NCBI GenBank assembly: GCA_963924565.1
Contig: OZ004608.1
Location: forward strand, 33,418,001-33,482,000
Length of the DNA: 64,000 nucleotides
From: Ascidiella aspersa
Taxonomy: Eukaryota
Direction of reading: 5' to 3'
Part shown: piece by piece, positions 5,658-57,386 of the stretch
Position numbering within the stretch: the stretch's first letter is position 1
Layout of the letters: each line of letters opens with the position of its first letter
Position numbers and translations under genes: made by a program
The notes under the pieces: generated by a model
The model's input: only the letters and a program-made list of their open reading frames with translations
Database searches by the model: none
What the model was told of the DNA's origin: nothing

Positions 5658-5714
5658 TTTGCAGATATAGCCGGAGAGAGGATTTGTTAAATAAAGCGAA
5701 GTGGGCAGATTAAT

Positions 5715-14893: not shown

Positions 14894-17800
14894 ATGGAAG
14901 AGTATTCTTCTGATAAATCTGATCAAAGTGACACAATGAGTGAAAGTTTGTCAAGAAAAGTTGTAAAACTCCTACAACCAGATGGTAGTTGCATGTTTCA
15001 ACATACTTTCAGCTAATTATCTAAAACTAATTTTTCGACGAAACAATAAAATCTCATTGCTTTGTTTCAGACACAGATGGATCGAGTAAAAATTCAGTGA
15101 TCAATCAACTTCATCAAAAAACTTTATCGAAACTTAAAAAGTGAATATGTTTTTATATTTTCTTCATAACCATGTGTCTTGTGTCAACATAAGTTTAGCA
15201 GTTGGCTTTCTTAATGTTATAGTAGGTCCTCTCTGGTTTTATACCCTTTTAACTATTTCCAAATAACTAAATTACAAAAGTGGCCAAGACAGATTTTCAA
15301 ATTCAATATTGCATTTGTATTTTATCCTCTTATTCTTCAAATTCACATAATTATAACTGAGTTCATCAAGTTTAAACCTGAAACTGTTATACACTTCCCA
15401 AAAAATTAACTGTGTTAGTATGTTCTGCTTGACTTTGAACATTGAAGTTGAATTAAAACAAAATTGGCACAGGGTCTCCTTAGTTTTTTATGTGTTTCTG
15501 AGAGGGCCGTTAAATATGGTGTAGCTACCAGGCATGGTATATACTAAAAGTAAGTTCTTCTGGTATTTATTTGTGTGTCGTCGCTATTATCACTTTTTAC
15601 TGAACGTTGTTTATCTCATTTTTGCTAAACAATATTCAGTAAAATGCTCCTTTTTTGTGTTGTTTACTTTGCGTGCTGTTGAGTGTGGTGTGTTATATCC
15701 CCAATGAAGGATTCCTGGATAGGGAGTCAAATATCAGACCTTACTTTCAGTATAAGAGAGTGATTGTGTGAACCATATGTTTTCTAAACGACCATAAATT
15801 CAATCATTTAATTTTTTCTAATTTTCTCAAAATTTTATAGAACCAAGGGCATTACAGACCTGAAGGAAAAGGACATCAAGGCAATCAACAAGCGGTTTAT
15901 GGAAGGACACCTGCCGAGATACAGAAAGCATCTTGTTGAATCAGAAGATAGTGAGGATGAGGATGATGATGATATCTCAGATGATGACATCACTGCTTCC
16001 AAAATGGCCACCGATAAAATGAACGAGAACGCCGGATATGTGAAGAAGGTAAGCTGTTATACTGAGATGAACAAACGATAAGTTTTTGACATAGTAAATT
16101 ACAAATATTGTATAAATTAAATTGCACTTTATAAAAGTAAACAAAACGTTCAACAAGATCATGTAAAATTTTTGAATTATTTTGCAAGCAAATAATTTTT
16201 ATTTTTTAGTTGCAAACATGTCATTTTAGGGTTTTTGACTATTTGAGGTCAAAAAAATCTTTTTTAACTGTTCTCTAGTTCTAGACAGCTATCCATAATC
16301 CATTATACATTAATTTTCTTCTCCACAATTTTTTAGTTGTTGTAGTTTGTTTTTGCAACTGTCAGACAAAGTACAGCTCTATATATTATAGTAGATGGAT
16401 CAAACTCTCGTAATTTTTTTTTTTTTGATTTTAAAAATGTTTTGCTAGAATATAAATTTTCAGTTATGAACAAGTCTAGTTATTGTGTTGGATGATTCTA
16501 GGTAAAGCATTTATTAAATAACTATTTTGCTTCTACCAATTGGTTTGCTTTACAGATGGTCGAATTTGTTGTGCAAATCACAGACAAACTGCAACGTTAT
16601 GCATTGAAGTATGTCTCGAAAGCTGGGCAAAGCTGGATGGTTTCACTGTTTCCGGCCAACCAAGTTTATACGCTGTCTCTTTTCCTGATCTACACCTACA
16701 TTCTCACCTCCAATTTCATGTCAGTTTTTGTGCCCCTGACTGTTTTAATACTGTCTTTCATAGCCCTGATCATTTCTTCAATTCGAATTCTGAGAGGTTC
16801 GTGAAATTTTTTCATACACATACGTAATACGTATGGTTGTGTGCTGTAAAATTATTATTGTTGAACCTTTATAAAATTGTTCAAGGAAATCATAGTTGAA
16901 GTTTTTAAACTGGTAAAGACCAATTTATTTGGCAATTTATCATTTGTAAAATTGTTCTTCCAGGAATTTATTATTTTAATAAATCTACTGGCGTTTCGAT
17001 AACCTACAGAAAATTTTCATCAGGGCACTGCCCACACACTTTTCCTAAAAGAACAATTTTACAATTGATACAATGCTTGGCAGCAGCAGTATATTCATTG
17101 GCAATTTATATTTGCGTTTTGTGTAGATATTGGTCTTTACAAAGTCCTAAATATGATTTCAGGTCAGCGACGCTTTAAGGAGTTTTTAGCATGGTCTGAT
17201 CTTCTTCTTTCTGTGGATGGAGCGATACATGTTGAGAAAGCCGAAGCCAACTACTTTAAAAACCACATTTCCCCGGTTCTTTCCCTGATACCGGCCGTCT
17301 CACTGGCGGTGATGTCCCTTTCAGCTGCTCCTACATATTTCGTTCCCGAAGCCCCTCTTGCTCTTATATCTCTGATTTTCTTTGCCATAAGCTGTTGGAC
17401 TTTACACAAATCTGAAGACCGTCTCTACATGCTGGCTGTAGCATGCGTAATCTTATCAACTTTAACAGAGCCATTGTACGAATTGTTGGTTCAGCATGAC
17501 AGTTCTCCATTTTCCATCGTAATCCCAGGCACTGAAACTCTTGCATTGGGAGTTTCTTTTGGTGCCCTTTTAAAAGTCTATGCCCTGATTCTGTTTCTGA
17601 GGGTGCCTTTCCAAAAAATGTACAGATGTACAGCTGTCGGATTTATGAAGAGCTCTGTTCCGTTGATCTTAATTTCACTCTGGTGGCAACTGTTTGTTCT
17701 CTTTTACAGCAAAAGCTCGTACTCTGGGTTGGTACAAACGTTTGGAGTTGTTATAATTGGTCTCATTTCACTTCCTGTATCTGGTTTTCTTCTCTTGCTC

Positions 17801-19798: not shown

Positions 19799-22257
19799 AG
19801 GAAAAAAATTACATGCTTTGTTGAGGGTTGCACTTTTCTTTGCTTGTATATTTGCACACTTCTGCTTAGCAAATGGCTGTTTTTTCACAAATTTTCTGGT
19901 TTGAAAATGAGAAATTCATTTGCAGAACCTATTTGTTTTTTAAATTACCCACATGATTTTTGTGATTATCAATAGTACGACCTATTTTTGTTCATATTTT
20001 ATGTTTAATACAGTATCACTAAGTTTGAAGCACTTATCTTGCAGTAGAAACACATATTTGTCATGTATCTATGTAATTTGCATGAATTTTTGTTTACAAG
20101 TGTGCCTTTATGTGAAATAATTATGGTGAATGTCACCTGTATGCAAATACTGCTTTGCTTTTCTTAACTAATCGTATATGCATAGTACATTACACACGCC
20201 TTTATTGCACATATGTTTGAAACACAATGTCATTTTCTTTCGAAAAATAGCAGATACGTATTATATCTTATTCTACACTTATTGTATTTGCATATCTTCC
20301 GAATTGATTAAAAACTGTGCTATTACGAGCTTTATTTTTAAACAAGACTGCAGGAATATGAACAACTATCAATGACCTAATTTTTTTACTTACATTTTTA
20401 TTAGCACTAATTTGTTGTACTTTCTGTCAATCAAATATTTACCTGTTGCATATTGCCAATAAACAGTTTAGCAGTAGCTGATACAGTGCATTTTGATGAA
20501 ATAGATATACCAGTCTAAAAAAATATTTTCTATTAAAAGGTACCTACCATTTTTTAAAGGACTTCTATCTAGTTAAAATCCAAAATGTACACTTTAAGTG
20601 ATATTATACTTTTGACAGATATTGTAAACTTTGCATCACCTTGTCAAACCTAGTTGTACCAAACACACCAAACATTTGTTTACGGCATCCAAAGTATGCC
20701 AGAGTTATTAGTAATTTAAGGAATTGACATAAACGGTGCACTAAAAAACTCCCTTTACCATAAAAAAAAATTAACCAGATCCACCATTATTTTACTACTA
20801 GAAATTACTCCACTCAGCTTTCTACAGGACTAAACATTCCTAAGCAGGTTCTGTAATATAAATACCACTTATTTCCTAATTGTTACCCTATCATTCGTAA
20901 TTCGTCAAAAGCACATCCACATATTTTTTTTATTAAATTGGTTCCAGCAAAAAAAAGTTCGGGAACATAAAATATCTAAAATTAAATTAATTTTTACTGT
21001 GAACTACACACAAAAAAAATTGTATATTATGTGGCTACTGAGTTAAACCTTTATAAAACAAAACCACTCACGAATTGATTCAGCCGTTGTATTGAGACAT
21101 AATAATGGCAGTTCCTATTGGGAGGGAAGGGAATATTTTTGTGTTTCAACTACATAGAAATTGCCGACAGCGAACAACAGCAAAACATATATATATGTTG
21201 GCGGGTGTTTTTTTTTCATACTACACAAAATATTGGTGCAAAAATGCAGTTTGCATCGAAAGAATGCCCTTAGGGCTGTTTGTAAACAAACAAACACCAC
21301 TTGTTTAGGAAAAAATGCTACAGTGGCGCAAACAGCCCCATCAGCTGCTGCGAAGAAGCCGAAACATGAACAGGAAAGACCTGTATTGCTCGATAGGGAG
21401 GTAGAATCCTTGGGCTTTAAAATGGGAATTGTCAAAAATGCTGTCTGCAAGAGCCACTGTGCCGGGCGGCTAAAGACAGCTAAATATATTTTTTTTTCGC
21501 TGTCTGCCACATATATGGTAATACTCCTCGGGTGAAAAACACATAACGCTTATTTTCTAAATATGGGAGAATCGCTCCGCAAGGAATCATAAAAAATTAT
21601 GCAGTAATATTTTTTGACAAGAAAAAGATACACGCACAGAAAATGGAAACACAAATAAACAGATTTGATGAACTTGTTCGTTTTTCGCCGAGATAGGCAC
21701 CAAATGAGAATGAAGAAAATTTGAATAACCAATGGCACAGCCTTGTAATTACTTTTCCCAGGACCAGGAGATGTTTAATTACTTTGTGCAGAATTATAAC
21801 GAGCGGGTGAACACATAAAGTACCACATACAAGTAACAGCCGTAAATATGTTGCAGTGAGAGGAATTTTGCACAAAACTTGAAGGGGTTGCTTGAACTTT
21901 TAAGTTTAGAAGGGCAGTAAACTGTTGTACACATTGCCTCGTTTTTATAAAACAGAAAACCGTATTTGTAAAAAGAAAAACTGCACTATTGCAAGACCCA
22001 ACTACGCAAACCGTTTTTGAGGCCGAGGCGTGGACACGGTGACAGCTAGATTAACTCTCTAGCGAAAGTTATAGCACTAAAAAAAATATAATTAGTTAAT
22101 TAGAACTAACAGTAAATGGCAATCACTTTCTGGGATTTTAAACAGGCTTTGAACACGCCGCACCCTGTTTGGTTGTGGCAGGTTTTTGTAACTGGAAAGT
22201 GTTCTTTCAAAAGCAGCCTTCGTTTTTTTTTAAGCACAGTTACCAAAAAAGGGTTGT

Positions 22258-25200
22258 TTAGGATGTGTGCATGGCAGATGTGTTACTGTCAAAAATGTAC
22301 AGATTGTTTGTGGCGGCCACTGCAATGATACGGTCCTTGGGGTGCCAGGCAGTGTGCAGAATCTTCCGGTTAAAGTCGAGACTGTCGACGCTAACCTCGT
22401 CTTTTTTACGTTTGCCTCCCTGGTTGACCTGAAGCAAAGGAGAACACTTCTTGTAACATAAAATTTAAAAAAATTCTCGGCAGAATAAGAAATCAGACAA
22501 CGAAAAATGTAAGGCAGTGGTTTCCAAGTTAAAACCTTAATATGTGTTGTTCACTTGCAATTTTTTTTTTTAATGATTTATGGCCCCTTGCAATGAAAAT
22601 GAAAAAAATACGGCATTACATAAGAATGATTTACATTGAAAAAAAAAAAAAAACACATTAATGTTGACTAATATTATAGCAAAGTTTATTAGGATTGGAT
22701 AGCTTCGCTTTATTCTATTTACTTATTTTGGTTGGGCTACGGACTAAAAAGTATTTATTAAAACTGACAGCTCACTAAAAACCATCTATAGGTATATCTG
22801 GTCATTGAGGTGGACAGAAAGGAACAAATGTGATGACTGCTTCGATACTTAAATAATCTTTCTTAATATGTATAATAACATTTTTGTGTTGTTTTTCAAA
22901 ATGAAAAAATGCCTACAATTAAATACTACACATGTTAAAGCGCCAGCAGCATATTAAATTTTGGGGACTGTCAGCCAAGACTGAGTAACCCCTATAAGTT
23001 TAAATTAGAAGCTTTGAAACTCTTAAAAGTTGATGACATGAGTTTTTAAATGACTGGCGTGATTTAAGCTTTTTGAAAAGTGTTTTCGTTTAACATTTTC
23101 GACTAAATTTGGGTATTTATGCCAATTTTTGCACCTAAAACAATTATCTTGCTTTAGGTTCAGTTTTCTATTTTCAGTTTAGTTATTGCTTGTATAAGCC
23201 ATGTTTACCAAATTTATAGTTTAATGTTTTATTTGAATATCAATGACTTGGAGTTGACCTGTTTTTATAATGACTTGGGACTGGGTCTTGACCGATTACT
23301 TACAACACTGCTTAGAGATTAGTAAACTGCTCAGCAATTTCATACCATAAGAAAATGTAAGATATTCGAAGGTCAAGTGTTAGGCAAGCTTCGGAAATGA
23401 TCATATTTGCCAGTCACGAATAGGCTCAGTTGTTTTAACCAAGGGCTTATATAAATGAAAGTGGGAAATCATCTCAATGGAAAGATGAAATTATAAATGG
23501 TTGAGGTTGTTACCTTTTTGGGCTTTAGCAGGGCCCTGGGCCGACTGTTCTCTCTTGACGCTTCTAATGTTACATCTCGTTTTGAGTTGCAGTCGAAAAT
23601 ACGGAAGAAGTTGTTGTACGATCCGGTCATAATTGCACTAAACACAAAATCAAAGTTACACAAAATGAACTCTAGCCAACCTAGCCAACCAACTATTATT
23701 TTAACTATGTTTGTGACAAGCCAAGGTACCTGTCCGTGCCATTCCAGCAACATTCAAACTTGTCAAAGATACAGTCGTTTTCATAGAGGGAACAGAGCTT
23801 GCTTCGAAGATACTCATGGACCTTGGAAAATTGAAACATTTTCTAATTTAAATGGTCGTTTAGTGGATTAGCAAAGCAAGAGCAACTACTATTTACCAGA
23901 TTTATGTTTTGGTTGCTACTAGTATAATAAACAGTTCAAGACTTTTAACGAAACATGTAAAATATATATTAAGTTAAAATGTTTTATACAAAGAATAGAA
24001 CAGCTATATAAAAGGCTAGTTGTATAAATGAGTAATTGATGATTGCAGTAAATGGTTGTTTAGTGGTTCAGCAAATCAAGAGCAACACTACTATTTGTCA
24101 AAGTTATGTTTTGGTTGCTACCAGTATAATAAACACTATAAACAGTTCAATACTTTCAACAAAACGTGTAAAATATATGTTTAGTTAAAGGTTTTATGCA
24201 AAAAAATAAAGGCTAGTTTAAAAAGTATAAAAGAGTAATTGAACACACATTAACTTGCTGTGGCTGTGTAGTTTGTATAAACCTAACTTAGGTAAAAGCG
24301 GCTTTGCATAAATTCTTTCTTTTTTCAAATATACCTAGCACACACTGCAAAGCTTTTGCTGTGGTGTTACCTGGAACGATTCGACCGGCTTGTTTTCCAT
24401 GTTCAGGTCCCACACCTTGACGGAGAGATAATCTCGGGTGATCATGTAACGGCCACTGTTGCTGAACTTGACATCACTAATGGAAGAAATGATCTCCGAG
24501 AAGAAGGACCGACTGTTTGGGTCTTCTGGCTCCTCGAAGACTACACAAGACAAATTACAAAATTTCTAGTTGAAAAAAATATTGGGTTTCAAAAATGCGT
24601 CTGCTTTGGTGCTTTATTCTGTGCTTTAATATGTATGGATACCATGCATTGGTTTCAAACAACTATTTTTGCTGCAGGTAACAAAATTTAACAATCAATT
24701 GATTATTTTGGTGTTTACAACCTTTTTATGATTATGACACCTTTGAAATAACAAATAGATAGTGACAGTCCTACTACAGTTCAGTGGTTTGATGTAAAAG
24801 TACTATACACAGAACTGGAACAACACAATGGAAAAAATATTATTTGATTTATTGAAACGTTTCATTATGTTGTGCCCACTCTAATTTTTCACAGGGGTGC
24901 TTAACAATGTCGCAGCACCCTGGTTGGGAACCACTGGTTTAGATATAGGAAAAATCACAACAGAACCACACTTGTTGTCAGTATGAAACACATTGTTATC
25001 AGTATGTATCACTTTTAACCTAGTTAGCTTTAAAAAAAGTGTGACAAAATCAAATGTCAAATACCACCAATTTTATATAAAACAACATTATTTCTTAAGA
25101 CTGTTTATTAAGAGTGTACATTGCAACTTTTTAAACTTTGATATGCTTGATTTCTGGATAAATATTATCTATTACCACTCAACCATATTTCATCTCTTAG

Positions 25201-36500: not shown

Positions 36501-36710
36501 TTTAAAACACTATGTTGAAACGGCATGTTATTGCACTTGGGTAAAAGTTATTTTAGAAGGCGAAAAAATCGCAGCCCAATGCAAATCTGAAAGCATAAAG
36601 GAACAGAGCGGTTTTAAAATACAGCTGACGTGACGAGTAACAAACAAGCGACTAAAAAACACAAAGCGTTCACTATAAGAATAAAAAAGAGTCCAAATTT
36701 CACGCTTTAG

Positions 36711-36972
36711 CATTGGTCCTCAACGGGAGTGCCGCGGCACCCTGGGGTGCCATTTCTAATGCCCAAGGGTGCCGAGAGATATTTAAGAATATTTAAGAAT
36801 CTGATTTTTGCTCAACTCTTACAACTTTTTGTGTAGAGTTGATGTGTGTTGTTCCAGTTTCGTTTATTGTGACATTCTAGTGATTTACCAACGGAAAAAT
36901 CTTGTAGGGGTGCCGCAATCTATTTATCAATTATGAGGGCTGTCGCAAGCCATGAAAGGTTGAGAACCACTG
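36711..36972. mobile_element. Charlie-like MITE (GGGGTGCC family)
   Basis: CATTGGTCCTCAAC...GGTTGAGAACCACTG. Homologous to 45824-46106 and 8926-9122. Confidence 0.75.
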
Positions 36973-37096
36973 AGCTAAGAGATACCGTCAACAACACACG
37001 CGTCACTTGACAAGCAAAAATAAAGGGCGATAATAGAAAACAAAGCGAACGGTAAGAAGAATTTTATGAAACTGTAAAGTGCCGGGGTATATCATT

Positions 37097-46000: not shown

Positions 46001-49000
46001 GATCCAGCTCATTCTAGTAATTTATCTACGGAAAAATCCATGGCGCTGAAATTTATTTATTATTTCCAAGGGGCGCCGCAAACCATAAAAAGGTTGAGAA
46101 CCACTGTCTTAGTGTTATATCAGGGTAAGGGTAATGATGCTTTTGCACGAGGACCGCATAGCAAAAATCAAGAAAACAAACATAATTACAGGCGGCGGGC
46201 GGCGGGACGCTCCACTTTGACGGGGACCGCAGGTTGCTCGAGTTGCTCTGGGGCAAATTCTTGATAGCCGTGTCCTCATAAGAGGGCATTTTTCGTTTGG
46301 GAACAGGAAAGTTCTGCTGGTGCATTCCGGGCCCGAAAAAGTCCGGCTTCAGGCCCTGACTGGGCCTTCTTTCACCCTGCTGCTGATGCTGCTGGGGGGT
46401 TGGGGGGTATCCTGGGCTGGGGGGGTTTCGCCCACTGATTGGCCCCCTGCCCAGGCGCATCTGGGACAGCTCGGAAACCAGGGACGAGGTAACTAAGGGA
46501 GACACGGTGTGTGTTTTGGGGGTGTTTTTTCCATTATTTTCAGAATAAATTATAATAAAATATATTTTTAGGGGCGTTTTTAAATTGTTTTTTTTTTAAA
46601 TAAATTATAAGCAAATATATATATATATATTTTTTTTTCATTATTTATAGATCTTTTTAAAACATATTTTCTGGGGGATGTTTTTACAATAATTTTGCAT
46701 GGTTGGCGGCGGATCTTTCTGTTTCAAATTTTGGCGTTGTTTTTAGTTTTTGGGGGCGTGGGAAATAATTATCGGTCAATGTATGACACAGGAACAATTT
46801 TGGGTGTTCTGGTTTTAAAGGTATTTTCTGATATTTACCACCACGCTACCCAAGTTATGTTGTAGGTTTAATTTTACCGTAAACTTTTGAGTGAAACATC
46901 CAACTCTGACGTTTCGCAAAAGACAGGCGAAAAATTTTGTGGTAAAATCGGCCGGAATCGGTGTCACCCCTTGTGTATCAAGCATTTTCGAATTCGACCG
47001 AAAAAATCAACCGCCAACTCAAGCAATCAATAAAAAAACAAGTATTAGATTCATAAAAAATGATAGTAACGAAGACAGACACGAACAAAAACGTCAGTTA
47101 AACTTCGGCACAGGGTACTGATGGAATCGCAAAGTACTCAGTGCTGGTTTAATAACAAAACGAGTAAAAGGCATGCTCGGAGCAGAACTTCAAACTGCCC
47201 GAATTCCAGTTATAAGAGTCGTAAGTGCCTTGGCGGTGATTGTTTTTCACACCGCGGCGGCCTTTACGCGAGAGAAGTTAATTAGTAAGAAAAACAACGA
47301 TTAGTTAGCTTCGAACGCCGAACAGACTTATACAAGCAACCCTTGTGGGTTCTTACCTTCGCTGCTGGGGGTCGGTGGGTTGTAGGAGGGGGCCGCCATG
47401 GGGGGCATTCGCGGCATGTTTGGTGGATCCCTAGAAAAGGGAAAAAAGAATAATCAAGTTTTAGCCGCGTGTTTGCTGGTTCGTGTTAAATGTATGTAGA
47501 TTGTAGGCCTACTATTTTTTGAGCAAAACTATGTATTTAGACTGCAACATCTAACTCTATAGCGATTCGAGAAAGACATGAAAAAATTATGTATTTAGAC
47601 CGATTGACCACGAACATAATATTAATGCTGTTTTTAGGTACTTTTGTCACCCAAAGATAGATTATTTATAACATTCTATTGCTGTGCATCACTAAAACTA
47701 CAAGTATGCTTTTTCAACCAGCAAAGTTTTTTTTTTCATTTTTAGAAATCTTCTTTCGAATAAAAAATAGTTTATGTATACATTCTGGCGCCTTTAGCGT
47801 ACAAAAGTGGCATGCTGTACATTTTAACAAGAACTTACACATTTCAGCTTGAAAACAATTTACATTTGCAAGTCGGTTGGTTAATCGATAGTAGCGCGGG
47901 GAATCATAAAAAACGATCCATTTGCATATCTTTAAGTCTTAAATTAAACGGTTGTGAACGAAGGTCGGATAGGATTCGAGCGTGTAAGTTTTTTTTTATA
48001 GGATTCGAGTGTGTAAGTTTTTTTTATTCGCACAGCTAAAACATGGTTGCAGACTCAAAATAAAAACCAGAACAATTTCTAGCCAACGCCGTTTGTAACA
48101 AGACCAAACACGACTAGAAAGATGAGCTGGACCAAGTGCAGTAGCATTTCGATCCACGTAAAATCCCATTCAATTTAAAAGCACGCTAATATAAGGATAT
48201 AAAAAATACTCTGTTGTGGCCAGGGTTTTTTTAAGGTTTGGTTTGGGTGACCACTCAGTAGTTTTAAGAGACCGCAAGTGTTTCATTTAAATACCAAAAA
48301 GTTGCAAGTCCAAAATTTGGGAAACCGCTGGAGAAATTTGAAAACACCTTAAAAAAAACACTGGTTGTGGCTATCCATAGGTCAGCCAATGATGTGAAGT
48401 CAGCAATTAAGACGTGGCAACATCCGATTTCGATTGTATTGTTTCAATTTAGGCTACCTTAAAATGACCTGAAGAGTATGCCTTGGTCTTTTTGTTTCTT
48501 ATGAATATAATGGAAGGATCTATATAGGGCAATAGGCCGCGCTCTATTGTCGGACATAAATCGACTTTTGAGCGGATCTTATACACACACACACGCGCGT
48601 ATTACCCGGAATTGTACGTCATCGAAATAGAAATCGTATTCTATGACGGTAAACTATTGTGGTCGTTCCCGAAAAAGACAGTGTAAATAAGGATATCCCA
48701 TAAGGGTGATTTATAAGAATACATAGCGTGTTTACAATTGTACGTGAACCTTATAGCATCCGGGGCAATTTAAAGCAAATATTTGCGATGCTATAAATTA
48801 AAAGGTGCTACGTTGAACGAAAACAGATTTTATTATATCGTTTTGATGACAATTTTATCTAGAACATTTCGCTGAATATTTTTATAAACCCGAGTTTATT
48901 TCTAATAATTATTACGGAATCCTTTTTTTTTTCATAGGACAAAGTACATTTGGTAAATAAAAAAAAATCAGCAAATAAAGAATTCTTTTAACAGGGGCAT

Positions 49001-52000
49001 TGTTGGAGTCCAAAATAAAAGAACTCTACCCTGGCCTTAAATAGTTGCTGACTTGTTTTGTAAGGTTTAAAATAGTTCATTTTACAAACCACAATTGTCA
49101 AAGAAAATGAGCAAAGTCCATTTTCTAGTCAAAAAATATCAGCGAACAAAGTGTAAGTTTATTTTAGCCGGACTCTTCGCATTGTGGACAGTTAAAAATA
49201 TTCTAGTTCCAAAGCCTCCGAAAATAGAGTTAAAATCTAATTAAATATGTGCGAAACTAGTTTTTAGTATAAATACGTGCTTACTAGAAAAACAAAAAAC
49301 AAACAGTGCCTCAAAAAAAGCTAATAGCGCAGTTGCCAGTCCAAGGTACAAACGACGACTCATCAGCGGTTGCTGCCTGCTACTGACGCGATCAACCGTG
49401 ACTCACGGTTCGTTACGTAGACGCTTACGTCACGAAACTGATGGCGCCAGGTTTTGACTTGCCAAAGCCGTCCAAAAATAACTTGAAAAAGCATTAACTT
49501 TAACGGCAAACATACAGAAGCCTTTACTTTGAAACGCGAACTGGTTTTAACCTTAACGCAAGGCTACTTGGGTTTTGGCGTATTTCAGCGGTATTTTAAC
49601 GCATATCTTGTGTTACGCTGTGAACCTTCATTGGATAAATGTTTCCTTGATAAGTATTCATCTTCAAGCTCACAGATCCGTGCGTACATAAATGTTTTCT
49701 CGCTACAAGCAAAAAGGTGCTTTAAATTGAACTATCGATCGGAAGAATGCTTATTTAGAAGTTATACAAATGCGGACGTGAGGTCTATCTCTGACCGACT
49801 TCGTGCAAAAGCAAAGCGCGATGATTGTGCTTTCGTCACTTGGTCACAACACGTTCCGGCGCTGTGATGTGCTCGGTATTACATCAGGCGCGTTTAGGTG
49901 TATTCCGCACGTAAGACGCAAATAAATTTCGGGAATTTTCGCCAAAGTGCAAACACACAACATACACAAAGACCTACTTTCTGATTTTGGGCTTGAACGG
50001 TGGCATCCCTATGTTCATCTTGGGAACCCCAATCGATGGACGGGGGCTTGGGGGCTCGAATTCGGGTTGGTCGTCGGGGCCGGACGAGCTGCTACCTGTA
50101 AAAGATACGGATAGATTGTTAGGATTTTCTGTGTGCAGGTCTGGACATAGGGTGTGGACAAGGCTTGATTAACCATTAGGCAATATAAGCACATGCTTTG
50201 GACATCCTGGTAAAAAGCGGGGCACCATAAAACAATAATTGTCGAATTTACATTATATTTGTTCTATACCCTAATCATTTTTAAGATAACGGACTTAATA
50301 AAGTGAAATTCGGGTAAAATAGGAGCAAATTTATAATATATACGTTATTGAAAAATAATATTTCGGTATCGACACGCAAAACATACAGGTCATTCCTATC
50401 CGTACAATTTACCTAAACAAAAGCCTCCTTAGCCTGGCAATTCCGACACAGCTAATGAAGTATATTTATAACTATATAATATACACAACAGCAACAGACT
50501 GCGATCTAAGCCAAAGCCACAACAGTCAACAAAATAACGAAAAAACGAAGGATTTTTCCACCTTGACTGCCAACGCGGCTCGGATAATGGCTTCCGTGTT
50601 TGGCGTCGAAGCTGTTTTGTCGCGATTCGAATCCACTGTCGTTGTTCTTACGATCCTTGAAGCTGGCATTGGGTGAGTGGTTGATGGTGGGGTATGTGGG
50701 GGTCGGTGGGTCCCTGCCTGGCATCTTGAAGCTCGTGTTGGGTGAGGGGACTTTGGAGCAACAAATTGGGAGTAAGATACGGGTATTCCTCGCGTTTTGG
50801 TGTTACAATTTGTGGCGATATAGTTTTACATCGACGCCCGTGCCTTATCATTAATAATAGTAATGAGAAAGAGGGATGTCCGACACCGATACCCATTTTT
50901 GGACAAGTATCGCGATGCCACATGGTACCAAATGACGTCAATATTATGATCAATAATCAAAATAAATAAAATTTAAGATTGATTCAAGGTTGTTAGGCCC
51001 AAATTTCCTTAAGCGTTAAAAAGTCTAGTTTCCTTAAGTTGTTAACCTTTTGTTTTGTTTTTTATAACTTTACTTTGCAAAGTAGAATAACTGCGAAATC
51101 ATGGCTAAAAAAATTCCTCTAATTTCCTAAAACAAATTGATATTCAGTAATTCATGCCCTGGTTTTAAAGGTTCGAGTAGGGCTTAAAAAATTTTTTTTC
51201 AAAGGTGTTAAACTTGATAAAATAGTAGTTTTTAAGACTGAAGTGTCAATGTTGAAAAAGTAGAATAATTGGAAACACACTTTGGCCTTCTTAATTTGTT
51301 TATTTCTTCACGTTGGGATTCGGGCTCATTTTTGCCCTAACTCAGTTCCAAATGTATTTTTGTAACATTTTTATTTGTATCTATATGATATAATATGCAC
51401 GGATCTGTAATGAAGTTATGAATAAATTTTTGCCCCAACTCTGGAACTAAATAGGAAACACCGATACCAACCTAGTAGCGGACTAGTAGCGATACTACCA
51501 CTTAGCATTGGGAATCGTTGCCCGTTTAACAACATCGGACATCCCTATAGTTATTGCCATTTGTACAAATGTTTCCCACGTCCATCTTAAATTGTTAGTT
51601 TGGGTTTAAATCTTATTTGAAAATAGCCAAAGGACTACAATGGCTAAAATGCACCCATTAGAACGCCTGTAGCCACAATAGTCATTAAACATTAATTGTT
51701 TTAAAGGCGTAGACCACAATTAACTGTAGTTCTGCTAGTTGTGGGTAGAAAGATATTATATGTTTATCGCAATATCATCCGAATAAATGTACAGGTATAC
51801 GGTTAAGAGTAGAATAATTAGAGAACAAATTAAAAGACAATAAATCAACCAAGTGTTGACCGCAATGGTGGCTTGTAAACCACAAAAAACAATAAAATAT
51901 GTAGGTGGAAACACAAACAAAACATACCTGCAGGTGGAGGCCTGAAAAACAAAGCAAACAACCATTAGTAAAAAAACAACACTTTAACAGCATCTTAAAT

Positions 52001-55000
52001 TCAATCTCAGCAAGAGTTCACCTCTGAGGGATGCCGTGGGTCATTTGGTCGGTCACCGGCTCATAAACATCATCAAGAATTGCTGAGGGCAGGTCTTTGA
52101 CTGGACGGGGTGGCGGCTGCATTCCTCTTTGCTGCGTTATCAAAATAAAACGTTAAAGCGACTGGATTCGTATTGGGTGTATTTAAAAGTATAGGAAAAG
52201 TTGGTAACCACAGATTAGGCTGACAGTGTTGTAACCAAGTCATTTGTGAAATTACGTAAGTCCTAGTCAAGTATTACAAATCTAACAACTCCTAGTCATT
52301 TTACCAGAATGACTTAAGTCAAGTCAAATCATTTAAAAATAGTGAATAAGTGCACTTCAGTAATGTTATGGTCTTGATTCAATACAACACTGTATTCTGC
52401 AGCCCCAACAGAAGCTATACTTTCCAACTTAATTGGTGTTCGCTTCAGGTCATTTATGATCTACCAGTTACATCAATGGAATATATAACGTCGAACGGTA
52501 CTTAAACGATAAACATAGAAAAAATTAAAAAGGTAATATCTTTTACAAAAGTAGAGCAAAAACTCTTTCATGATAATACTGCAGAGCAGTAGCTTTGGTT
52601 TCATATAACTAACAAATGCTGTATTCAGAAATACGACCCAATTGACCAGCTTTCAAGTGCCCAATGTTCAGCAGATCAATTCTGCTAATGCTAAACGGCC
52701 AAAATTGGGTAATCCTTTCAAATGGCTGGATTTTAGGAAAATAAGCAACAATCACGAACAACTCTATTCTAAGTTGCAACGTACCAACGAAGGCGGAGCA
52801 ATAGGTGGTCCTCTTTGATAAGGAGGTCCATTCAATATTCCTTTGCCGATTTCTTGTACAACTAAAAATATACGATATTTATTTATGTTAGACACAAGTA
52901 GAGTGGTTCTCAGCCTGTTTCGAGAAATATCCTGAATGGGGTAATTTGACAATGATAAAAGGCAAAAAATAGCTTACTTACCTTCGTTTATTTTTTAAGT
53001 TTAATTTAAATTAAAATTCTTAGGTGATTCTTATGTTGTTTATTCATTAATTGATAACACAGGTCATAACTTTAAATTTTATAAAACGGTGTAATTAAAG
53101 TGCGTTAAATTCTTCTTAGGGGTAACTACACAATACGGTTAAAAACATGGCATTAGAACCAAATAGTACAGTGACTGCTAATTCCAACTTATAGACTTAC
53201 CTACTGTGTTGTCTATTCCCAAGTACGTGTCCTCTGCTGCATTAAAAACATGATTTTATTGATTAAACTAAAATGCTCTGTCATCTAAGTGCCAATTAAT
53301 TGCAATAGAAACATACGTTCATTTGGATAATTCCTCGGGTAAGGTGGTTGGCCTCCAAAAGGGACGTTGGGTACAGGCATTGCTGGGTTGCCCCAATGTT
53401 GTTCTGTGTTTAAAACAAAGAAATGTTACGATACAATGTTCCAGAGACAACGAAATAACTAATTCACTGGATTTAAGGCTACTCCATACTCCAGTGTTGT
53501 AACGACTTGACTTAAGCGCACTTAGTCACTGTTTTTTCAGTCGACTTGACTTGACTTAAGTCATTTGGGTAAAATGACTCGACTTGACTTGGACGAATGA
53601 CTTAAAATTTGTGTTTTTTTCAAGAACTTTTTAAATAAAATTGAGCTATTTATCCAAATATTTGCACATAAAACAATTTGCTTGGTAAATGTTACGTTTT
53701 GCCTATTTTTTAGACCAGGTATTGCTCATAATCGTACGAGTGTAACGTTAATTTAAGTATAACATATTATGAGGTTAACGATTTATTTTTATTACAAAGA
53801 GATGGCTTAAAATTGACTTGCTTTAATTTGGGCTTGACTTGCGTCTCAACTCATGACTTGGACTGGGACTTGACTTGTTATTTATCAAAAATGACTTGAC
53901 TTGGACTTAAGGTATTTTAAAAATGACTTGACTGGAACATAAATCATTTCAAAAAACAACACTGGGCTACGCATCTAGCTATTACACGATGTTCATACTG
54001 CCTTATTGCGTCGGTAAAGCAAACAAAAAAAAAACACAGCTTTAAGATAGGTTTTCACCCAAAATAAATCATCCTGCTTTTTCAAGCGGTTTGTTTACCT
54101 CTTTGACTTTTGGGAACGACCGGCGTATAGTTGGTCACTTTTTGCGGCCTGTCTAAAGTGCTAAATCGCCTGTTCCGCGAATCTAGCTCTGGAAGTTGAG
54201 GCGGACAGTTGCCTGTAAATTCAAAAGTACTCTTTCTTCTAGCTTTTGGACTCGGCTCTCTAAACTGGTCCATTGGGAGGTACAATTCCTCGCCGGGTTC
54301 CATACTACGGCGTATTGGTTGATTGTTTTCCGTTAAAAATTAGGTAAAGGCACCCTAAAAGCGAACACGAACAGCCAGGCACTAAAACGAAATAGGTGGT
54401 ATTTTAAGAACACTATTCCCACTTGACTGGGAGAAACAACCAACGTTAAACTGTGATGCGGACGTTCAGGCAAATTAGCAACACAGCAGTTGCAGTTTCT
54501 GACTTCTCTGAATGACCCACGGCAAGTAAACTGTTGAAATAAAGACAGGTCTCTGTTCTGACACTGGTATAGTGAAACTACATCCAACGTTGTCTGCCGC
54601 CAAACAGAACCTCTCGAACAAACAAGTTCCCATCATTTCAGCACCGTAGCTACAAGGAAGTAAACGATTCTTTCAGTCATGTACTGACACAGTCCTGACA
54701 ACAGGAAGTGCCAGGGATAGAGCAAAGACTGAGACTCCAGCTATTGCTTCTCGCCTTTCCTCGCCTAATCTAAATAACAATTTGCTGAGTGAAACCTATA
54801 ATCCAATTTAGATTTACATACTTTCTTTATTCTCTTTGTGTGACGCGGATGACGTGACTCAGTGCAGGGCTATTGAAATTAAATGCTGCGCGAGGTTATA
54901 ATTGGTGAAACATTCTACGTTTAATATCATAGATAAGTTTTGTAAAAGTGCAGCCATAAACCTAGACGCAAATCAAAATGAAAGTGGTTCTCGCAAAATT

Positions 55001-57386
55001 CGTATGGCCATAAATCAATGTGTTTGCGCTCAGTGCCACTGACTTTCTTCCTTAGCAAACAATAAAGCGATATTAATGAAATAGAAACATGAATTATCGA
55101 CAGAAAAACAAGTTGAGCTTCAACATACCGTTTTTGCCTCCAGGTGGACCTTGCGAAAACTGAAATAAAAAAGTTATGTTACCGAAGTAATATTTACACC
55201 ATTCACATATATTTTATTAATTGGGGAAAATTTACATGATAAGGCAACCGGCAGAATAGCTACCATAACATGGGTTTTGTGTAAAAATATGCTTGGTAAA
55301 AAATGGAAGCATCAATTTTTAATTATTTCCAGAATTAGGCTACCATAGTTTTTTTTTCAATTTATTGAAATAAATTTGTTAAGTTAACAGAACTGACCAA
55401 AGCAACATTATATATTGTGCTTAAAAACGTGTAAAAATTGTATTAAGTTTAAATAGAATAATTTGCGATTTCAAATATTCGCCATAAAAAATGTTAAAGT
55501 ATTTTTTTAGTTTAACTTTCTATAAGTTAGAAAGGTTTCCTCTATGACATTAAAAAAATGTATTGTGACAAAAAAAAAGTAATGCCTTATTAGACCTACT
55601 TTAATTAGTGTCCTTAGACCAATTCTATAAAATGTGCATTTTTTTAAATATAATTCCAAGATATACAAACCTCATCGTCTGAATAATCTGACCACTCATC
55701 GCCAAAATCATCTACATAACGATCCTGTGCATGTTGTGGCTGTTGGTGGTGTNNNNNNNNNNNNNNNNNNNNNNNNNNNNNNNNNNNNNNNNNNNNNNNN
55801 NNNNNNNNNNNNNNNNNNNNNNNNNNNNNNNNNNNNNNNNNNNNNNNNNNNNNNNNNNNNNNNNNNNNNNNNNNNNNNNNNNNNNNNNNNNNNNNNNNNN
55901 NNNNNNNNNNNNNNNNNNNNNNNNNNNNNNNNNNNNNNNNNNNNNNNNNNNNNNNNNNNNNNNNNNNNNNNNNNNNNNNNNNNNNNNNNNNNNNNNNNNN
56001 NNNNNNNNNNNNNNNNNNNNNNNNNNNNNNNNNNNNNNNNNNNNNNNNNNNNNNNNNNNNNNNNNNNNNNNNNNNNNNNNNNNNNNNNNNNNNNNNNNNN
56101 NNNNNNNNNNNNNNNNNNNNNNNNNNNNNNNNNNNNNNNNNNNNNNNNNNNNNNNNNNNNNNNNNNNNNNNNNNNNNNNNNNNNNNNNNNNNNNNNNNNN
56201 NNNNNNNNNNNNNNNNNNNNNNNNNNNNNNNNNNNNNNNNNNNNNNNNNNNNNNNNNNNNNNNNNNNNNNNNNNNNNGCCTACGCTTTGAAGTCAAAATC
56301 AATTAAAATGCACATAAATCGTTTACAAATTAAAAAAAGTCAGCAATTTGAAAATTGTCGTTCAATAGTCAGCAATTTGAAATTGTCGTTCAGTTAACAT
56401 TTTATCGTAACAATTGAGTTTTTAATGACGTTTAAAGACATTTTAATCGTATTAAATCTTCACTAGAGCAATATTACGGTATACGCGAGCCGGCAGAATT
56501 AACGACCCAGGTCTAGTTTATCGCATTAGGTTCAGTTCGAACTTCTTTATGCTTTATAGTTGCGTATTCCTGATTTAGCCGATAGTTTTGAACAGTTTCT
56601 ATTGTTTCGATTGTGATTTGCAATTATCCTATTTCTTATTTGGATAATATACTAGGTCCTAATTGTTAATTTTTTGCAAGTATTTTTACCTGTTTTTTTA
56701 ACTGTTTACACAATTTTTTTCTAAAATAACCACCGTTTTGTTTTTCTTTGGCATTTTTATCGCTGTTAGTCTTTTTGATGTGACAAAAACATTAATTAAG
56801 CAATTTTGTGAGTTTGCATACACCTGAAAAAATAACGATATGTGTTCGACAAACATCAAAATTATGTGGTTGACGATTAGCCAAGACACTAATTTATCGT
56901 TTTATACAACAATTTGATGTTTAAATCAATGTATTTCTAATAGGTCAAAATGTAGTCAAAAATTTACATTTCAAGGTCAAAACTTGTAAAAAATTTCTCA
57001 TTTTTTTGGTTAAAAAATAATCGCCCTATACTTATAACCTAAAACTATTAAAATTTGGTAAGATAATTGTTGATTAAAACAATTTTAAACATTGTCAAAA
57101 ATATATTGCAATTTGACAATAAACAATGGTGTCCAAATATCAGTACATTGAATATTCATAGAAAAAAAAAAGTTATTTTCAAATTTTCAACCGCCTAATT
57201 AGCAAGTCTAAATATAGTCCATTATAGTTTTTATACAGATGCTTACGCCTAAATTGTCCAAGTAGCGAGTTTACAATAAAAAGTAAACATTCACTTACGG
57301 TACGGTGGTCTAGGAGCATATCCTTGTCGGCTTGCAGGTGAGGGCTGACCATGAGAAGGTCTTTGCCTTCCGTAACTTGGGTACAT
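37097..57386 (-). CDS. SLP-76/BLNK/CLNK-family adaptor: acidic Tyr motifs, long Pro-rich region, C-terminal SH2 (long isoform, spans assembly gap)
   Basis: Exons 57386-57299 (MYPSYGRQRP...), [gap]-55671 (DRYVDDFGDEWSDYSDDE), 55159-55129, 53403-53317, 53236-53201, 52861-52785, 52131-52022 (DDVYEPV), 51941-51928 (14-nt microexon), 50750-50562, 50095-49978, 47430-47357 and 46492-46190. SH2 exons are 44730-44603 (QPWFASVTREQA), 38712-38578 (EGTFLVRP...FNLQIRKRSDQQYALGSKK) and 37207-37097 (NERTFSSVCSMMEYYMAAPLVL...*). The YALG.KK..E..F.SV...PLVL pattern matches the SLP-76/BLNK SH2 subtype. Phases are consistent downstream of the gap. Confidence 0.8.
37441..37854. mobile_element. Young hAT MITE nested in a TAGGG/CCGATA-family copy
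   Basis: Perfect 15-bp TIR CAGTGATTCTCAACC/GGTTGAGAATCACTG, perfect TSD CTCAAAAG, and GAGCCGC subterminal repeats. Confidence 0.85.
40182..41345. mobile_element. Foldback-like element carrying a minisatellite
   Basis: The left end ttttgcacaatgtgtatgcgaaactatgcaaaaaatgtgcgcacat is the near reverse complement of the right end. The left arm holds about 2 inverted repeat units and the right arm about 17-18. Confidence 0.7.
40385..41293. repeat. 51-bp tandem repeat, ~17-18 copies, two unit variants
   Basis: The unit AAAGGCATGTTAAGATGTGCGCACATTCTTGTAAAAAGTAAGTATATTTTT contains the palindrome ATGTGCGCACAT. Variant B has CAG(C/G)GCA(A/G)TTTAAAATG. Confidence 0.95.
41489..41882. mobile_element. TAGGG/CCGATA MITE (hAT-like)
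   Basis: TTAGGGAATGTCCGATA...ATCGGACATCCGAAT flanked by the 8-bp direct repeat AGTCACCA. TGACGTCA at 41573. Confidence 0.75.
43083..43321. repeat. Diverged tandem duplication of ~125 bp
   Basis: actaaat.tatcgc..gaaat...acgcagg...tttgca.ct..aacgtacagtgtac.ttgctaata.cat occurs twice. Confidence 0.7.
45002..45565. mobile_element. GACTT-rich hAT MITE with an internal exact ~72-bp duplication
   Basis: CAGTGTTGT...ATAACACTG with a 7/8 TSD (CGGATCGG/CAGATCGG). The duplicated block lies at about 45072-45215. Confidence 0.75.
45824..46106. mobile_element. Charlie-like MITE (GGGGTGCC family)
   Basis: Perfect TIR CAGTGGTTCTCAACC/GGTTGAGAACCACTG. Near-TSD CCTTGGTG/TCTTAGTG. Confidence 0.8.
50871..51547. 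mobile_element. TAGGG/CCGATA MITE
   Basis: AGGGATGTCCGA...TCGGACATCCCT TIR. TGACGTCA at 50933. Confidence 0.7.
53492..53964. mobile_element. GACTT-rich hAT MITE
   Basis: CAGTGTTGT...ACAACACTG TIR with GACTTG arrays. Further copies or remnants at ~44122-44430, 52223-52392 and ~23243-23310. Confidence 0.75.
54099..54303 (-). CDS. Alternative first coding exon of the SLP-76/BLNK-like gene (gives a ~528 aa isoform)
   Basis: MEPGEELYLPMDQFREPSPKARRKST...PKSQR ends at a phase-1 donor (G|gtaaac) that fits exon 53403. An in-frame TAA lies 13 codons upstream of the ATG, and a ttttag acceptor lies about 50 nt upstream. Confidence 0.6.
55753..56277. other. Assembly gap (525 N)
   Basis: Run of N that interrupts a coding exon of the SH2 adaptor. 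Confidence 1.

What the first reader, a model, noticed from the sequence alone, without database searches (positions are those of the whole stretch)
14894..57386. Ancient WFS1-PPP2R2 convergent gene pair, followed by a SLP-76/BLNK/CLNK gene: possible pre-vertebrate state of a vertebrate paralogon
Seen in sequence: WFS1(+) and PPP2R2(-) sit tail-to-tail about 2.5 kb apart, with a SLP-76-family gene immediately next. Recalled knowledge: human WFS1 lies directly next to PPP2R2C in the same convergent orientation on 4p16.1, and CLNK is also on 4p16. LCP2 with PPP2R2B (5q) and BLNK with PPP2R2D (10q) sit on the paralogous chromosomes. Inference: this compact block may preserve ancestral chordate microsynteny in a lineage whose gene order is usually scrambled, which would hint at a functional constraint such as shared 3'-end or regulatory elements.
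Basis: partly seen in the sequence, partly recalled or inferred. Interest (0 to 1): 0.75.

Follow-up and report, generated by a model that had tools for sequence, protein, structure and literature searches.

The report
Wolframin, B55 and BLNK-like gene neighbours
In this sea-squirt genome a wolframin gene, a PP2A B55 regulatory-subunit gene and a BLNK/SLP-76-type adaptor gene lie side by side, as their human relatives are recalled to do on chromosome 4p16, which is most likely a leftover of ancestral gene order and not a new kind of feature.

Summary
WFS1 (+, stop codon ends at 19798) and PPP2R2/B55 (-, stop codon 22258-22260) lie tail to tail, 2,459 bp between stop codons. A BLNK/SLP-76-type SH2 adaptor gene (-, stop 37097-37099) is the next recognisable gene. 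Each of the three is single-copy in this 308.6 Mb ascidian assembly.

RNA reads show separate 3' ends. The WFS1 UTR ends near 20.48 kb and the PPP2R2 UTR near 21.05-21.09 kb. About 0.5 kb between them is unread, so a shared 3' end is not supported.

One other tunicate-like organism very probably carries WFS1 and a PPP2R2 exon on one 25,661-bp metagenome contig. That rests on matching contig length only. Four other WFS1 contigs match no listed PPP2R2 contig. Papers document the human order JAKMIP1-WFS1-PPP2R2C and the zebrafish neighbourhood.

Other paralogon markers I could place (TACC, LETM1) are on other chromosomes, so this is a three-gene island. The N gap cuts a 5' exon of the adaptor gene but does not touch the adjacency.

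My reading is an inherited microsynteny, a new example of a known kind. Earlier scan notes report other paralogon-like neighbourhoods on other pieces of this genome, not this block.

The parts
14894..20480 (+). WFS1 (wolframin-like) gene. Putative start 14894. Homology-mapped exons at about 15821-15928, 16553-16810, 17147-18196, 18880-19128 and 19592-19798 (stop). The 3'UTR runs to about 20480, with AATAAA at 20458-20463.
   Evidence: Pfam WC-rich and WCOB. tblastn of 8 wolframin relatives. Spliced RNA joints and depth. Poly(A) signal read. Seven to nine hydrophobic stretches in the large exon. Single copy in G000.
20481..21050 (.). Spacer between the two convergent 3' ends. Depth is zero or near zero on both strands.
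   Evidence: X4 depth is 0 on both strands in the bins 20412-20779, 0.28 in 20780-20963 and 5.1 in 20964-21147. X3 depth is 0 in 20596-20963. X3 contigs end at 20458 and begin at 21087.
21050..31543 (-). PPP2R2 (PP2A B55 regulatory subunit) gene. The last exon runs 22430 down to about 21050-21090, with the stop at 22258-22260 and a 3'UTR of about 1.2 kb. Coding exons lie at about 23500-23640, 23735-23818, 24368-24562, 25439-25606, 26949-27239, 28865-29065, 29930-30028 and 31463-31543. The start-codon exon is further upstream and was not located.
   Evidence: PDB match to human B55 alpha. Exon segments. tblastn of 8 B55 fragments. RNA depth of 30-56 and the acceptor at 22430. Single copy.
37097..37207 (-). 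Last exon of the BLNK/SLP-76-type adaptor gene. It holds the C-terminal part of the SH2 domain and the stop codon at 37097-37099.
   Evidence: Reading of splice sites and frame. A weak, non-significant alignment to the C-terminal part of SH2B SH2 domains (E 1.4).
38578..38712 (-). Middle SH2 exon, which holds the FLVR arginine motif.
   Evidence: Pfam SH2 E 5.5e-5. The only PDB match is the BLNK SH2 domain 2eo6, E 7.9e-5 and 1.8e-4. One strong copy in G000.
44603..44730 (-). First SH2 exon, preceded by a Pro/Ser-rich stretch.
   Evidence: AG acceptor, GT donor and a phase that fits the next exon. No PDB match on its own.
46056..54339 (-). Candidate proline-rich and tyrosine-motif exons of the adaptor gene. 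They are open segments at 46056-46595, 47331-47453, 49977-50168, 50509-50802, 52021-52152, 53288-53425 and 54085-54339. Exon borders are not established.
   Evidence: Open segments and composition, proline 10-27%, with Y-x-x-P/V/M motifs. No Pfam family in the pieces tested from this range: 46053-46505 and 54082-54303, and 47331-47453, 49977-50168, 52021-52152 and 54085-54339. No RNA evidence.
55671..55752 (-). Readable 3' part of an acidic, tyrosine-bearing exon that ends in a GT donor. Its 5' part lies in the unread stretch.
55753..56277 (.). Assembly gap or masked stretch, 525 N. Not filled and not bridged.
57294..57386 (-). It is an ATG in an open, proline-rich segment. Whether it belongs to the gene is unproven, because it lies beyond the gap.
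   Evidence: No Pfam match.
373..12440 (.). Left boundary of the block. Two 2OG-Fe(II) oxygenase genes, one on + (373-2065) and one on - (7830-12440).
   Evidence: Pfam 2OG-FeII_Oxy and DIOX_N.

Best explanation
The window holds three intact-looking, single-copy ascidian genes in the order WFS1(+) > < PPP2R2(-) < BLNK/SLP-76-type adaptor(-). The WFS1-PPP2R2 tail-to-tail adjacency is most likely inherited from the common ancestor of tunicates and vertebrates, because it matches the human neighbours at 4p16.1. The adaptor gene next door reflects the same ancestral linkage group. By recall, CLNK lies about 4 Mb further on at 4p16.1, on the same strand as PPP2R2C. Nothing here points to a mechanism that holds the genes together. 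The two convergent transcripts end separately. The short distances alone make a breakpoint between them unlikely, so passive retention is the default reading.

Shown: gene identities, arrangement, copy number and separate 3' ends.
Inferred: ancestry of the adjacency.
Recalled: human strands and the positions of CLNK, LCP2, BLNK and PPP2R2B/D.
For: Gene identities.

Single copy in the 308.6 Mb assembly.

Arrangement and RNA-confirmed splice joints.

Vertebrate side. A human 4p16.1 deletion covers the last exon of JAKMIP1, a LOC gene, WFS1 and PPP2R2C as one contiguous run (PMC5054462, passages). WFS1 lies telomeric of PPP2R2C (PMC9385144, passages). Zebrafish wfs1 and ppp2r2c are neighbours of D1X on chromosome 1, and the regions 5q35/4p16/10q23/8p21 are a quadruplicated linkage group (PMC3603308, passages).

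Second species. The WFS1 exon ORF P0031 lies on the metagenome contig Ga0210059_1003321, 25,661 bp. The PPP2R2 exon ORF most like the window's (P0045, 92% identity, source JGI) has a longest contig of exactly 25,661 bp. That contig's 8.7 kb downstream of the WFS1 WC-rich exon holds no recognisable other gene.

Background. Ascidian local gene order is often broken. Between Phallusia and Ciona only 2 of 9 genes kept both neighbours and 2 more kept one (bioRxiv 10.1101/371005, passages). A neighbour pair shared with human is therefore not the default.

Family age. A sea star BLNK-like protein with SAM, Pro-rich and SH2 parts shows that the adaptor family predates chordates (PMC11593052, passages).
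Against: The second-species link rests on equal contig length. The contig was not read beyond position 13,076, and the orientation there is unknown.

Four further WFS1-bearing ENA contigs (2,079,031; 86,267; 878,206; 641,994 bp) share their length with none of the PPP2R2-exon contigs I could see. Those are the 120 listed of 924, plus the cluster members, among them 704,107; 592,635; 764,363; 1,198,091; 372,339 and 32,559 bp. If any of these come from the same assemblies, the pair is split there. The species are unknown, and the length filter hides many exon ORFs.

The other 4p16-type markers I could place are not on chromosome C2. TACC_C is on C9, C7 and C5 and LETM1 is on C6. The C2 hits for GH38, Vps10 and amidohydrolase belong to subfamilies that, by recall, lie outside the paralogon. 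They are an Ams1/MAN2C1-type mannosidase, a SorLA type and, by eye only, an imidazolonepropionase-like exon.

A genome-wide scan of roughly 15,000 adjacencies would yield about one human-matching pair by chance (my estimate).

Orthology of the adaptor gene to LCP2/BLNK/CLNK rests on one 45-residue exon.
Confidence: 0.65

Rival explanations
1. Chance re-association. In a heavily rearranged tunicate genome, WFS1 and PPP2R2, and the adaptor gene, came to lie together independently of the vertebrate arrangement.
For: Ascidian gene order is frequently scrambled (10.1101/371005). The other paralogon markers that could be placed are on other chromosomes. Four WFS1 contigs of other organisms share no contig length with the visible PPP2R2 contigs. 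A whole-genome scan is expected to give about one chance match (my estimate).
Against: The coincidence would have to cover the same pair, the same convergent orientation (human strands recalled), a third gene whose vertebrate relatives sit on the same paralogous chromosomes (recalled), and a probable second species with both genes on one 25.7 kb contig.
Confidence: 0.15
2. Constraint-driven microsynteny. The pair or triplet is kept together because of shared cis elements. These could be overlapping or interfering 3' ends, or enhancers of one gene lying inside its neighbour, as in a genomic regulatory block.
For: The spacing is very short: 2.46 kb between stop codons and about 0.5 kb between transcript ends. 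The arrangement has been retained although the wider paralogon is dispersed.
Against: The transcripts do not overlap in the RNA read. That was about 6% of one run, and WFS1 depth was at most 4.45. There is no Rfam family in the window. There is no noncoding similarity between 19799-22257 and the other species' locus, best E 0.08. The UTR and spacer carry many SNPs and indels between individuals (tables 3-4). In the other species the PPP2R2 exon lies 9 kb or more from WFS1, so tight spacing is not kept.
Confidence: 0.12
3. The third gene is a different SH2 adaptor with a proline-rich N-terminus and a C-terminal SH2 domain (for example SHB-, SH2D- or SH3BP2-like), not a LCP2/BLNK/CLNK orthologue. 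The paralogon argument then rests on two genes only.
For: No SAM domain was found in the sequence that can be read. Only one 45-residue exon gives a significant family-level match. The first and last SH2 exons alone give no significant match. The Atlas search gave nothing. No phylogeny was made.
Against: BLNK is the only one of the solved SH2 domains in the PDB to match, even with the threshold raised to E 10. The alignment includes the Y-A-L-G-x-K-K stretch after the central strand. The layout is acidic tyrosine motifs, then a proline-rich part, then an SH2 at the very C-terminus, which by recall is the family's layout. BLNK and CLNK also lack SAM (recalled).
Confidence: 0.1

Closest known systems
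Human 4p16.1 segment JAKMIP1 - WFS1 - PPP2R2C (... CLNK)
   Same: WFS1 and PPP2R2C are direct protein-coding neighbours (PMC5054462). By recall WFS1 is on + and PPP2R2C and CLNK on -, which gives the same order and directions as WFS1(+), PPP2R2(-), adaptor(-) in the window.
   Different: The human genes are far larger. By recall CLNK is about 4 Mb away with many genes between. JAKMIP1 flanks WFS1 in human, whereas here the flank is a pair of 2OG-Fe(II) oxygenase genes. No JAKMIP domain was found in the genome, but the control was silent, so that search is inconclusive.
The 4p16 / 5q35 / 8p21 / 10q23 vertebrate paralogon (Pebusque 1998 and Putnam 2008, as cited in PMC3603308)
   Same: The four PPP2R2 genes and, by recall, LCP2 (5q), BLNK (10q) and CLNK (4p) lie on these regions. 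The window has one copy of each family side by side, as expected for a pre-duplication state.
   Different: Only three genes are together here. TACC and LETM1 relatives are on other chromosomes. An earlier scan note puts an ANTXR-PDLIM-ADAMTS block on another piece of this genome (s1-802570, not checked).
Catalogued ancient metazoan microsyntenic gene pairs (Irimia et al. 2012 and later catalogues; recalled, not read)
   Same: A gene pair kept adjacent over hundreds of millions of years while the surrounding order is lost.
   Different: For many catalogued pairs a regulatory reason is proposed, such as enhancers of a developmental gene inside a bystander gene. No such element was seen here. 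Whether this pair is in those lists is unknown, because the lists are in supplements that I could not open.
Sea star (Patiria miniata) B-cell linker protein-like, XP_038070561
   Same: A non-vertebrate member of the BLNK/SLP-76 family with a proline-rich middle and a C-terminal SH2 domain (PMC11593052).
   Different: It has an N-terminal SAM domain. None was found in the readable part of the window's gene, although an exon is hidden in the N stretch.

Membership tests
Wolframin (WFS1) | Wolframin cysteine-rich (WC-rich) domain | tested here: met
   PF20053 is split over two exons, E 1.1e-7 and 3.1e-10, both above the 24-bit cut-off.
Wolframin (WFS1) | C-terminal OB-fold (WCOB) domain | tested here: inconclusive
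   PF19913 E 6.9e-4, 20.4 bits against a cut-off of 23.4, covering profile positions 33-120 of 121.
Wolframin (WFS1) | Multi-pass membrane core before the luminal domains | tested here: met
   Seven to nine hydrophobic stretches (Kyte-Doolittle >= 1.6, 19-residue window) in the 348-residue exon. This is a crude measure and no topology predictor was run.
Wolframin (WFS1) | Best database relatives are wolframins | tested here: met
   28 hits at E<=1e-3 in 1.84 billion representatives. Among the 19 looked up, the named ones are wolframin-like from Phallusia (50% over the last 106 residues), Ciona (33%) and Styela (25%), fish wolframin, an unnamed Owenia fusiformis product, and a Ranatra chinensis hypothetical protein that UniRef labels wolframin cysteine-rich domain-containing.
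Wolframin (WFS1) | N-terminal Sel1-like repeats / EF-hand region (recalled) | tested here: inconclusive
   Pfam gave no match for the upstream exon ORFs. Tunicate wolframins are shorter (635-744 aa) than fish wolframin (1006 aa).
PP2A regulatory subunit B55 (PPP2R2) | B55-type seven-blade WD40 propeller, with high identity to solved B55 alpha | tested here: met
   One exon aligns to human B55 alpha residues 121-215, E 1.9e-35. Eight database B55 fragments map exons 2-7 at 48-90% identity. Exons 8-10 were found by motif.
PP2A regulatory subunit B55 (PPP2R2) | Complete open reading frame | tested here: inconclusive
   Exons 2 to 10 are open and in order. The exon with the start codon was not located. 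The exons were not joined.
SLP-76 / BLNK / CLNK adaptors | SH2 domain at the extreme C-terminus, of the family's own type | tested here: met
   Three SH2 exons end in the stop codon. Pfam SH2. BLNK 2eo6 is the only PDB match, even at E<=10.
SLP-76 / BLNK / CLNK adaptors | N-terminal acidic region with phosphorylatable Y-x-x-P type motifs | tested here: inconclusive
   Open segments hold D-D-V-Y-E-P-V, E-E-L-Y-L-P-M and an acidic tyrosine exon next to the gap. Exon use is not shown by RNA.
SLP-76 / BLNK / CLNK adaptors | Central proline-rich region | tested here: met
   Candidate exons have 10-27% proline. Borders are not established.
SLP-76 / BLNK / CLNK adaptors | N-terminal SAM domain (SLP-76 and the sea star BLNK-like protein; absent from BLNK and CLNK by recall) | tested here: not met
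   No SAM match in the 10 tested segments on the - strand, and none seen by eye between 55.3 and 60.5 kb. It could lie in the unread 525 N. It is not a defining feature of the whole family.
SLP-76 / BLNK / CLNK adaptors | Orthology by phylogeny | not tested
   No full-length relatives could be reached with exon-sized queries.
Ancestral 4p16/5q/8p/10q linkage group | WFS1-PPP2R2 adjacency in another non-vertebrate | tested here: inconclusive
   One match of contig length (25,661 bp) joins WFS1 and a PPP2R2 exon in one other organism. Four other WFS1 contigs have no match. Annotated genomes could not be reached.
Ancestral 4p16/5q/8p/10q linkage group | Further paralogon genes linked on the same tunicate chromosome | tested here: not met
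   TACC_C is on C9/C7/C5 and LETM1 on C6. The C2 hits are of MAN2C1/Ams1 type and SorLA type. JAKMIP, AbLIM and EVC2 were not found, and the controls were silent.

The most novel reading that the evidence does not exclude
The collinear triplet WFS1(+) / PPP2R2(-) / SLP-76-family(-) is the surviving core of the pre-duplication chromosome segment that became human 4p16, 5q and 10q. It has stayed together for more than 500 million years in both tunicates and vertebrates because cis-regulatory elements of one gene lie within or beside its neighbour, so that breaks are selected against.
Probability: 0.12. Interest if true: 0.55.

Novelty: new member of a known kind. Interest (0 to 1): 0.3.

Why it matters
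If the adjacency is truly ancestral, it gives a small, well-defined anchor for reconstructing the pre-duplication state of the 4p16/5q/8p/10q paralogon from a tunicate, a lineage usually thought uninformative for gene order. It would also support LCP2, BLNK and CLNK being products of the vertebrate genome duplications. It further shows a single-copy BLNK/SLP-76-type adaptor in an animal without lymphocytes. It does not reveal a new mechanism. Conserved neighbour pairs and this paralogon are both well known, and the RNA evidence speaks against a shared 3' end.

Tried and rejected
1. Neighbourhood look-ups in Ciona, Styela and a 2 Mb ENA contig.

2. Looking for PPP2R2 directly downstream of WFS1 in the only other locus I could fetch (L001-L005, one organism). 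There is none within about 8.7 kb, even at E<=5. There is no Pfam family in 8 ORFs there.

3. Noncoding conservation of 19799-22257 against those loci. Only noise, best E 0.08.

4. Shared or overlapping 3' ends. Rejected on RNA depth and contig ends, with the caveat of low WFS1 depth.

5. Extended synteny. An apparent mannosidase-amidohydrolase pair on the same chromosome (C2:13.56-13.61 Mb) looked like MAN2B2/CRMP1. The mannosidase proved to be an Ams1/MAN2C1-type enzyme and the amidohydrolase, by eye, an imidazolonepropionase-like exon. The C2 Vps10 gene is SorLA-like, not SorCS-like. All three were rejected as paralogon markers.

6. The WFS1 exon in the search for homologous proteins gave nothing. 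With an alignment it gave only 4 proteins.

7. The ESM Atlas search on the SH2 exon gave no usable hit.

8. Rfam found nothing in the whole window.

9. SAM domain: not found.

10. Literature. WFS1+PPP2R2C+synteny gave 3 papers, none on invertebrates. WFS1+microsynteny gave 1 irrelevant paper. BLNK/LCP2/CLNK/ohnolog gave 5 papers holding at least 3 of the 4 terms, and none of them holds 'ohnolog'. In the wolframin + ascidian/Ciona/tunicate search, none of the 10 listed papers holds 'wolframin'. Supplements of microsynteny catalogues were closed and may list this pair.

Full report
WHAT THE WINDOW IS. The window is G000:C2:33,418,001-33,482,000 of a 308.6 Mb assembly in 75 contigs. C2 is 39.76 Mb. 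Earlier notes of the scan call the animal an ascidian. That fits my results. The closest named relatives of its wolframin are from Phallusia mammillata (50% over the last 106 residues), Ciona intestinalis (33%) and Styela clava (25%). G+C content is 28-43% and the genes have introns of 0.5-6 kb.

THE THREE GENES.

WFS1 (+ strand). Pfam finds the wolframin cysteine-rich domain split over the exons at 17153-18217 and 18871-19194. The C-terminal OB-fold is in the last exon, which ends with the stop codon at 19798; that match is just under its cut-off. Eight database relatives map five exons by tblastn. Two of the splice joints are seen in RNA. The large exon carries seven to nine hydrophobic stretches.

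PPP2R2 (- strand). One exon aligns to human B55 alpha residues 121-215 at E 1.9e-35. Exons 2 to 10 are all present and open between 31543 and 22258. The exon with the start codon was not found.

The adaptor gene (- strand). An SH2 domain is encoded in three exons with canonical splice sites and intron phases 0/0 between them. It ends in the stop codon at 37097-37099. Its middle exon matches Pfam SH2. Among all solved structures it matches only the BLNK SH2 domain, even with the threshold at E 10. Upstream lie open proline-rich segments and segments with tyrosine motifs, which by recall is the layout of the SLP-76/BLNK/CLNK family. No SAM domain was found.

Each of the three genes has one copy in the genome. 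I searched exon by exon and never joined exons, so there is no full-length search, fold or tree.

THE ARRANGEMENT. The stop codons of WFS1 and PPP2R2 are 2,459 bp apart, tail to tail. The adaptor gene's stop lies 5.5 kb upstream of the first located PPP2R2 coding exon, on the same strand. Ten of the 14 ORFs of 60 aa or more in between gave no meaningful Pfam match. To the left of WFS1 are two 2OG-Fe(II) oxygenase genes. The block is therefore three genes long.

THE GAP. 55753-56277 is 525 N. On the - strand an open acidic, tyrosine-bearing segment with a GT donor at its 3' end runs into the gap, so an exon of the adaptor gene is cut. I could not test continuity or frame across it, because the only read-laying run was used on the WFS1-PPP2R2 junction. 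The adjacency claim is unaffected, because the SH2 and proline-rich exons, PPP2R2 and WFS1 all lie to the left of the gap.

THE 3' ENDS. One RNA-seq run of the same species label (X4, raw reads, about 6% of the run read, 469 reads laid) and three contig sets were laid on 17100-22600. The strand bias of X4 fits the two gene directions.

- PPP2R2's last exon is covered at depth 30-56 from 22435 down to about 21148. Depth falls to 5.1 in 20964-21147 and 0.28 in 20780-20963.
- WFS1 is weakly expressed, with depth at most 4.45. It shows signal to 20411, then none.
- X3 has a spliced WFS1 contig, so it is RNA. Its contigs end at 20458 and resume at 21087.
- An AATAAA sits at 20458-20463.

The two transcripts therefore end about 0.5-0.6 kb apart and do not overlap in these data. 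Rare longer isoforms are not excluded. X1 and X2 are unspliced and cover the introns and the spacer, so they are DNA.

IS THE ADJACENCY SHARED WITH OTHER ANIMALS?

Vertebrate side, from papers (passages only). A human 4p16.1 deletion removes the last exon of JAKMIP1, a LOC gene, WFS1 and PPP2R2C as one run (PMC5054462). WFS1 is telomeric of PPP2R2C (PMC9385144). Zebrafish wfs1 and ppp2r2c are neighbours of the D1X receptor gene, and 5q35/4p16/10q23/8p21 are treated as a quadruplicated ancestral segment (PMC3603308). The human strands and the positions of CLNK, LCP2, BLNK and PPP2R2B/D are recalled. By that recall, the order and directions WFS1(+), PPP2R2C(-), CLNK(-) are collinear with the window.

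Invertebrate side. A metagenome scan with a WFS1 alignment gave five loci. All are one locus of one other organism, 99.4-100% identical to each other, and its WFS1 is 36% identical to the window's. No PPP2R2 exon lies within about 8.7 kb downstream, and no other gene is recognisable there.

However, the PPP2R2 exon ORF most similar to the window's is P0045 (92%, source JGI). It is recorded on a contig of 25,661 bp. That is exactly the length of the contig Ga0210059_1003321 that carries that WFS1. WFS1 starts within the first few hundred bases of that contig, so the PPP2R2 exon must lie in its unread part, 13,077-25,661, downstream of WFS1. I take this as probable but indirect evidence for linkage within 25.7 kb in a second, deeply diverged species. 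The orientation there is unknown.

Against a general rule, four other WFS1-bearing contigs (2,079,031; 86,267; 878,206; 641,994 bp) share their length with none of the PPP2R2-exon contigs visible to me. Those are the 120 of 924 hits listed, plus the members. The species behind these are unknown, and the length filter hides many exon ORFs. This result is either uninformative or a sign that the pair is split in some tunicates.

IS THE WIDER PARALOGON KEPT? No, as far as I could test. TACC_C hits are on C9, C7 and C5, and LETM1 is on C6. The JAKMIP, AbLIM and EVC2 domains were not found, but the controls were silent, so those searches are inconclusive. Chromosome C2 does carry a GH38 mannosidase, an amidohydrolase and a Vps10 gene. 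On inspection these are of Ams1/MAN2C1 type, imidazolonepropionase-like (by eye) and SorLA type. By recall none of these belongs to the paralogon. The three genes are thus an island.

CHANCE OR ANCESTRY? Between Phallusia and Ciona only 2 of 9 examined genes kept both neighbours (10.1101/371005), so tunicate neighbours are not stable by default. A scan over roughly 15,000 adjacencies would give about one human-matching pair by chance (my estimate). Chance would have to supply several things together:

- the same pair;
- the same convergent orientation;
- a third gene from the same paralogous chromosomes;
- a probable second species.

I therefore put inherited adjacency at about 0.65, chance at about 0.15, and constraint by shared elements at about 0.12. 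There is no positive evidence for constraint.

NOVELTY. The vertebrate neighbourhood and the paralogon are known. A non-vertebrate BLNK-like gene is known from a sea star (PMC11593052). My searches found no paper that describes the tunicate block. Catalogues of conserved neighbour pairs keep their lists in supplements that I could not open. I rate it a new member of a known kind, of modest interest.

Noticed in passing
window 18388-18755 (intron of WFS1): A highly repeated element. Contig depth is 8,900-53,000 against about 60-100 around it. Contigs of two DNA runs lack 204 bp here (18509->18714, ends TA..AT), so this looks like a polymorphic small transposon insertion. RNA reads also touch it on both strands.
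   Followed up: no
window 40397-41295 (intron of the adaptor gene): A tandem array of a 51-bp unit, 17.6 copies, 93% matches. It creates long spurious ORFs on both strands.
   Followed up: no
window 45072-45215: A perfect 72-bp direct duplication (2.0 copies, 100% matches) in an intron of the adaptor gene.
   Followed up: no
window 373-2065 (+) and 7830-12440 (-): Two related 2OG-Fe(II) oxygenase genes (DIOX_N plus 2OG-FeII_Oxy) on opposite strands, with their 3' ends facing each other. This looks like a local inverted duplication. I know of no obvious vertebrate counterpart.
   Followed up: partly
window 21285-22197 and 20391-21857: Many SNPs and small indels in the PPP2R2 3'UTR and the spacer are seen at about half frequency in the RNA run and fixed in other individuals' contigs. 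Heterozygosity is high, and there is no sign of unusual constraint.
   Followed up: no
L011 6040-6627 (G000:C2:13,616,040-13,616,627, + strand): An open 196-residue segment that by eye looks like a Harbinger/PIF-type DDE transposase, next to the imidazolonepropionase-like exon.
   Followed up: no
L006 (G000:C2:13,550,001-13,560,000, - strand) and L008/L012 (C2:11.10 Mb, - strand): An Ams1/MAN2C1-type cytosolic alpha-mannosidase gene and a SorLA-type Vps10 receptor gene, identified while testing for extended synteny.
   Followed up: partly
window 54085-54339 and 57294-57386 (- strand): Two alternative candidate N-terminal coding segments of the adaptor gene, each beginning with ATG. This is the subject of a sister note (s1-788309). 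Their use cannot be judged without RNA across the N stretch.
   Followed up: no
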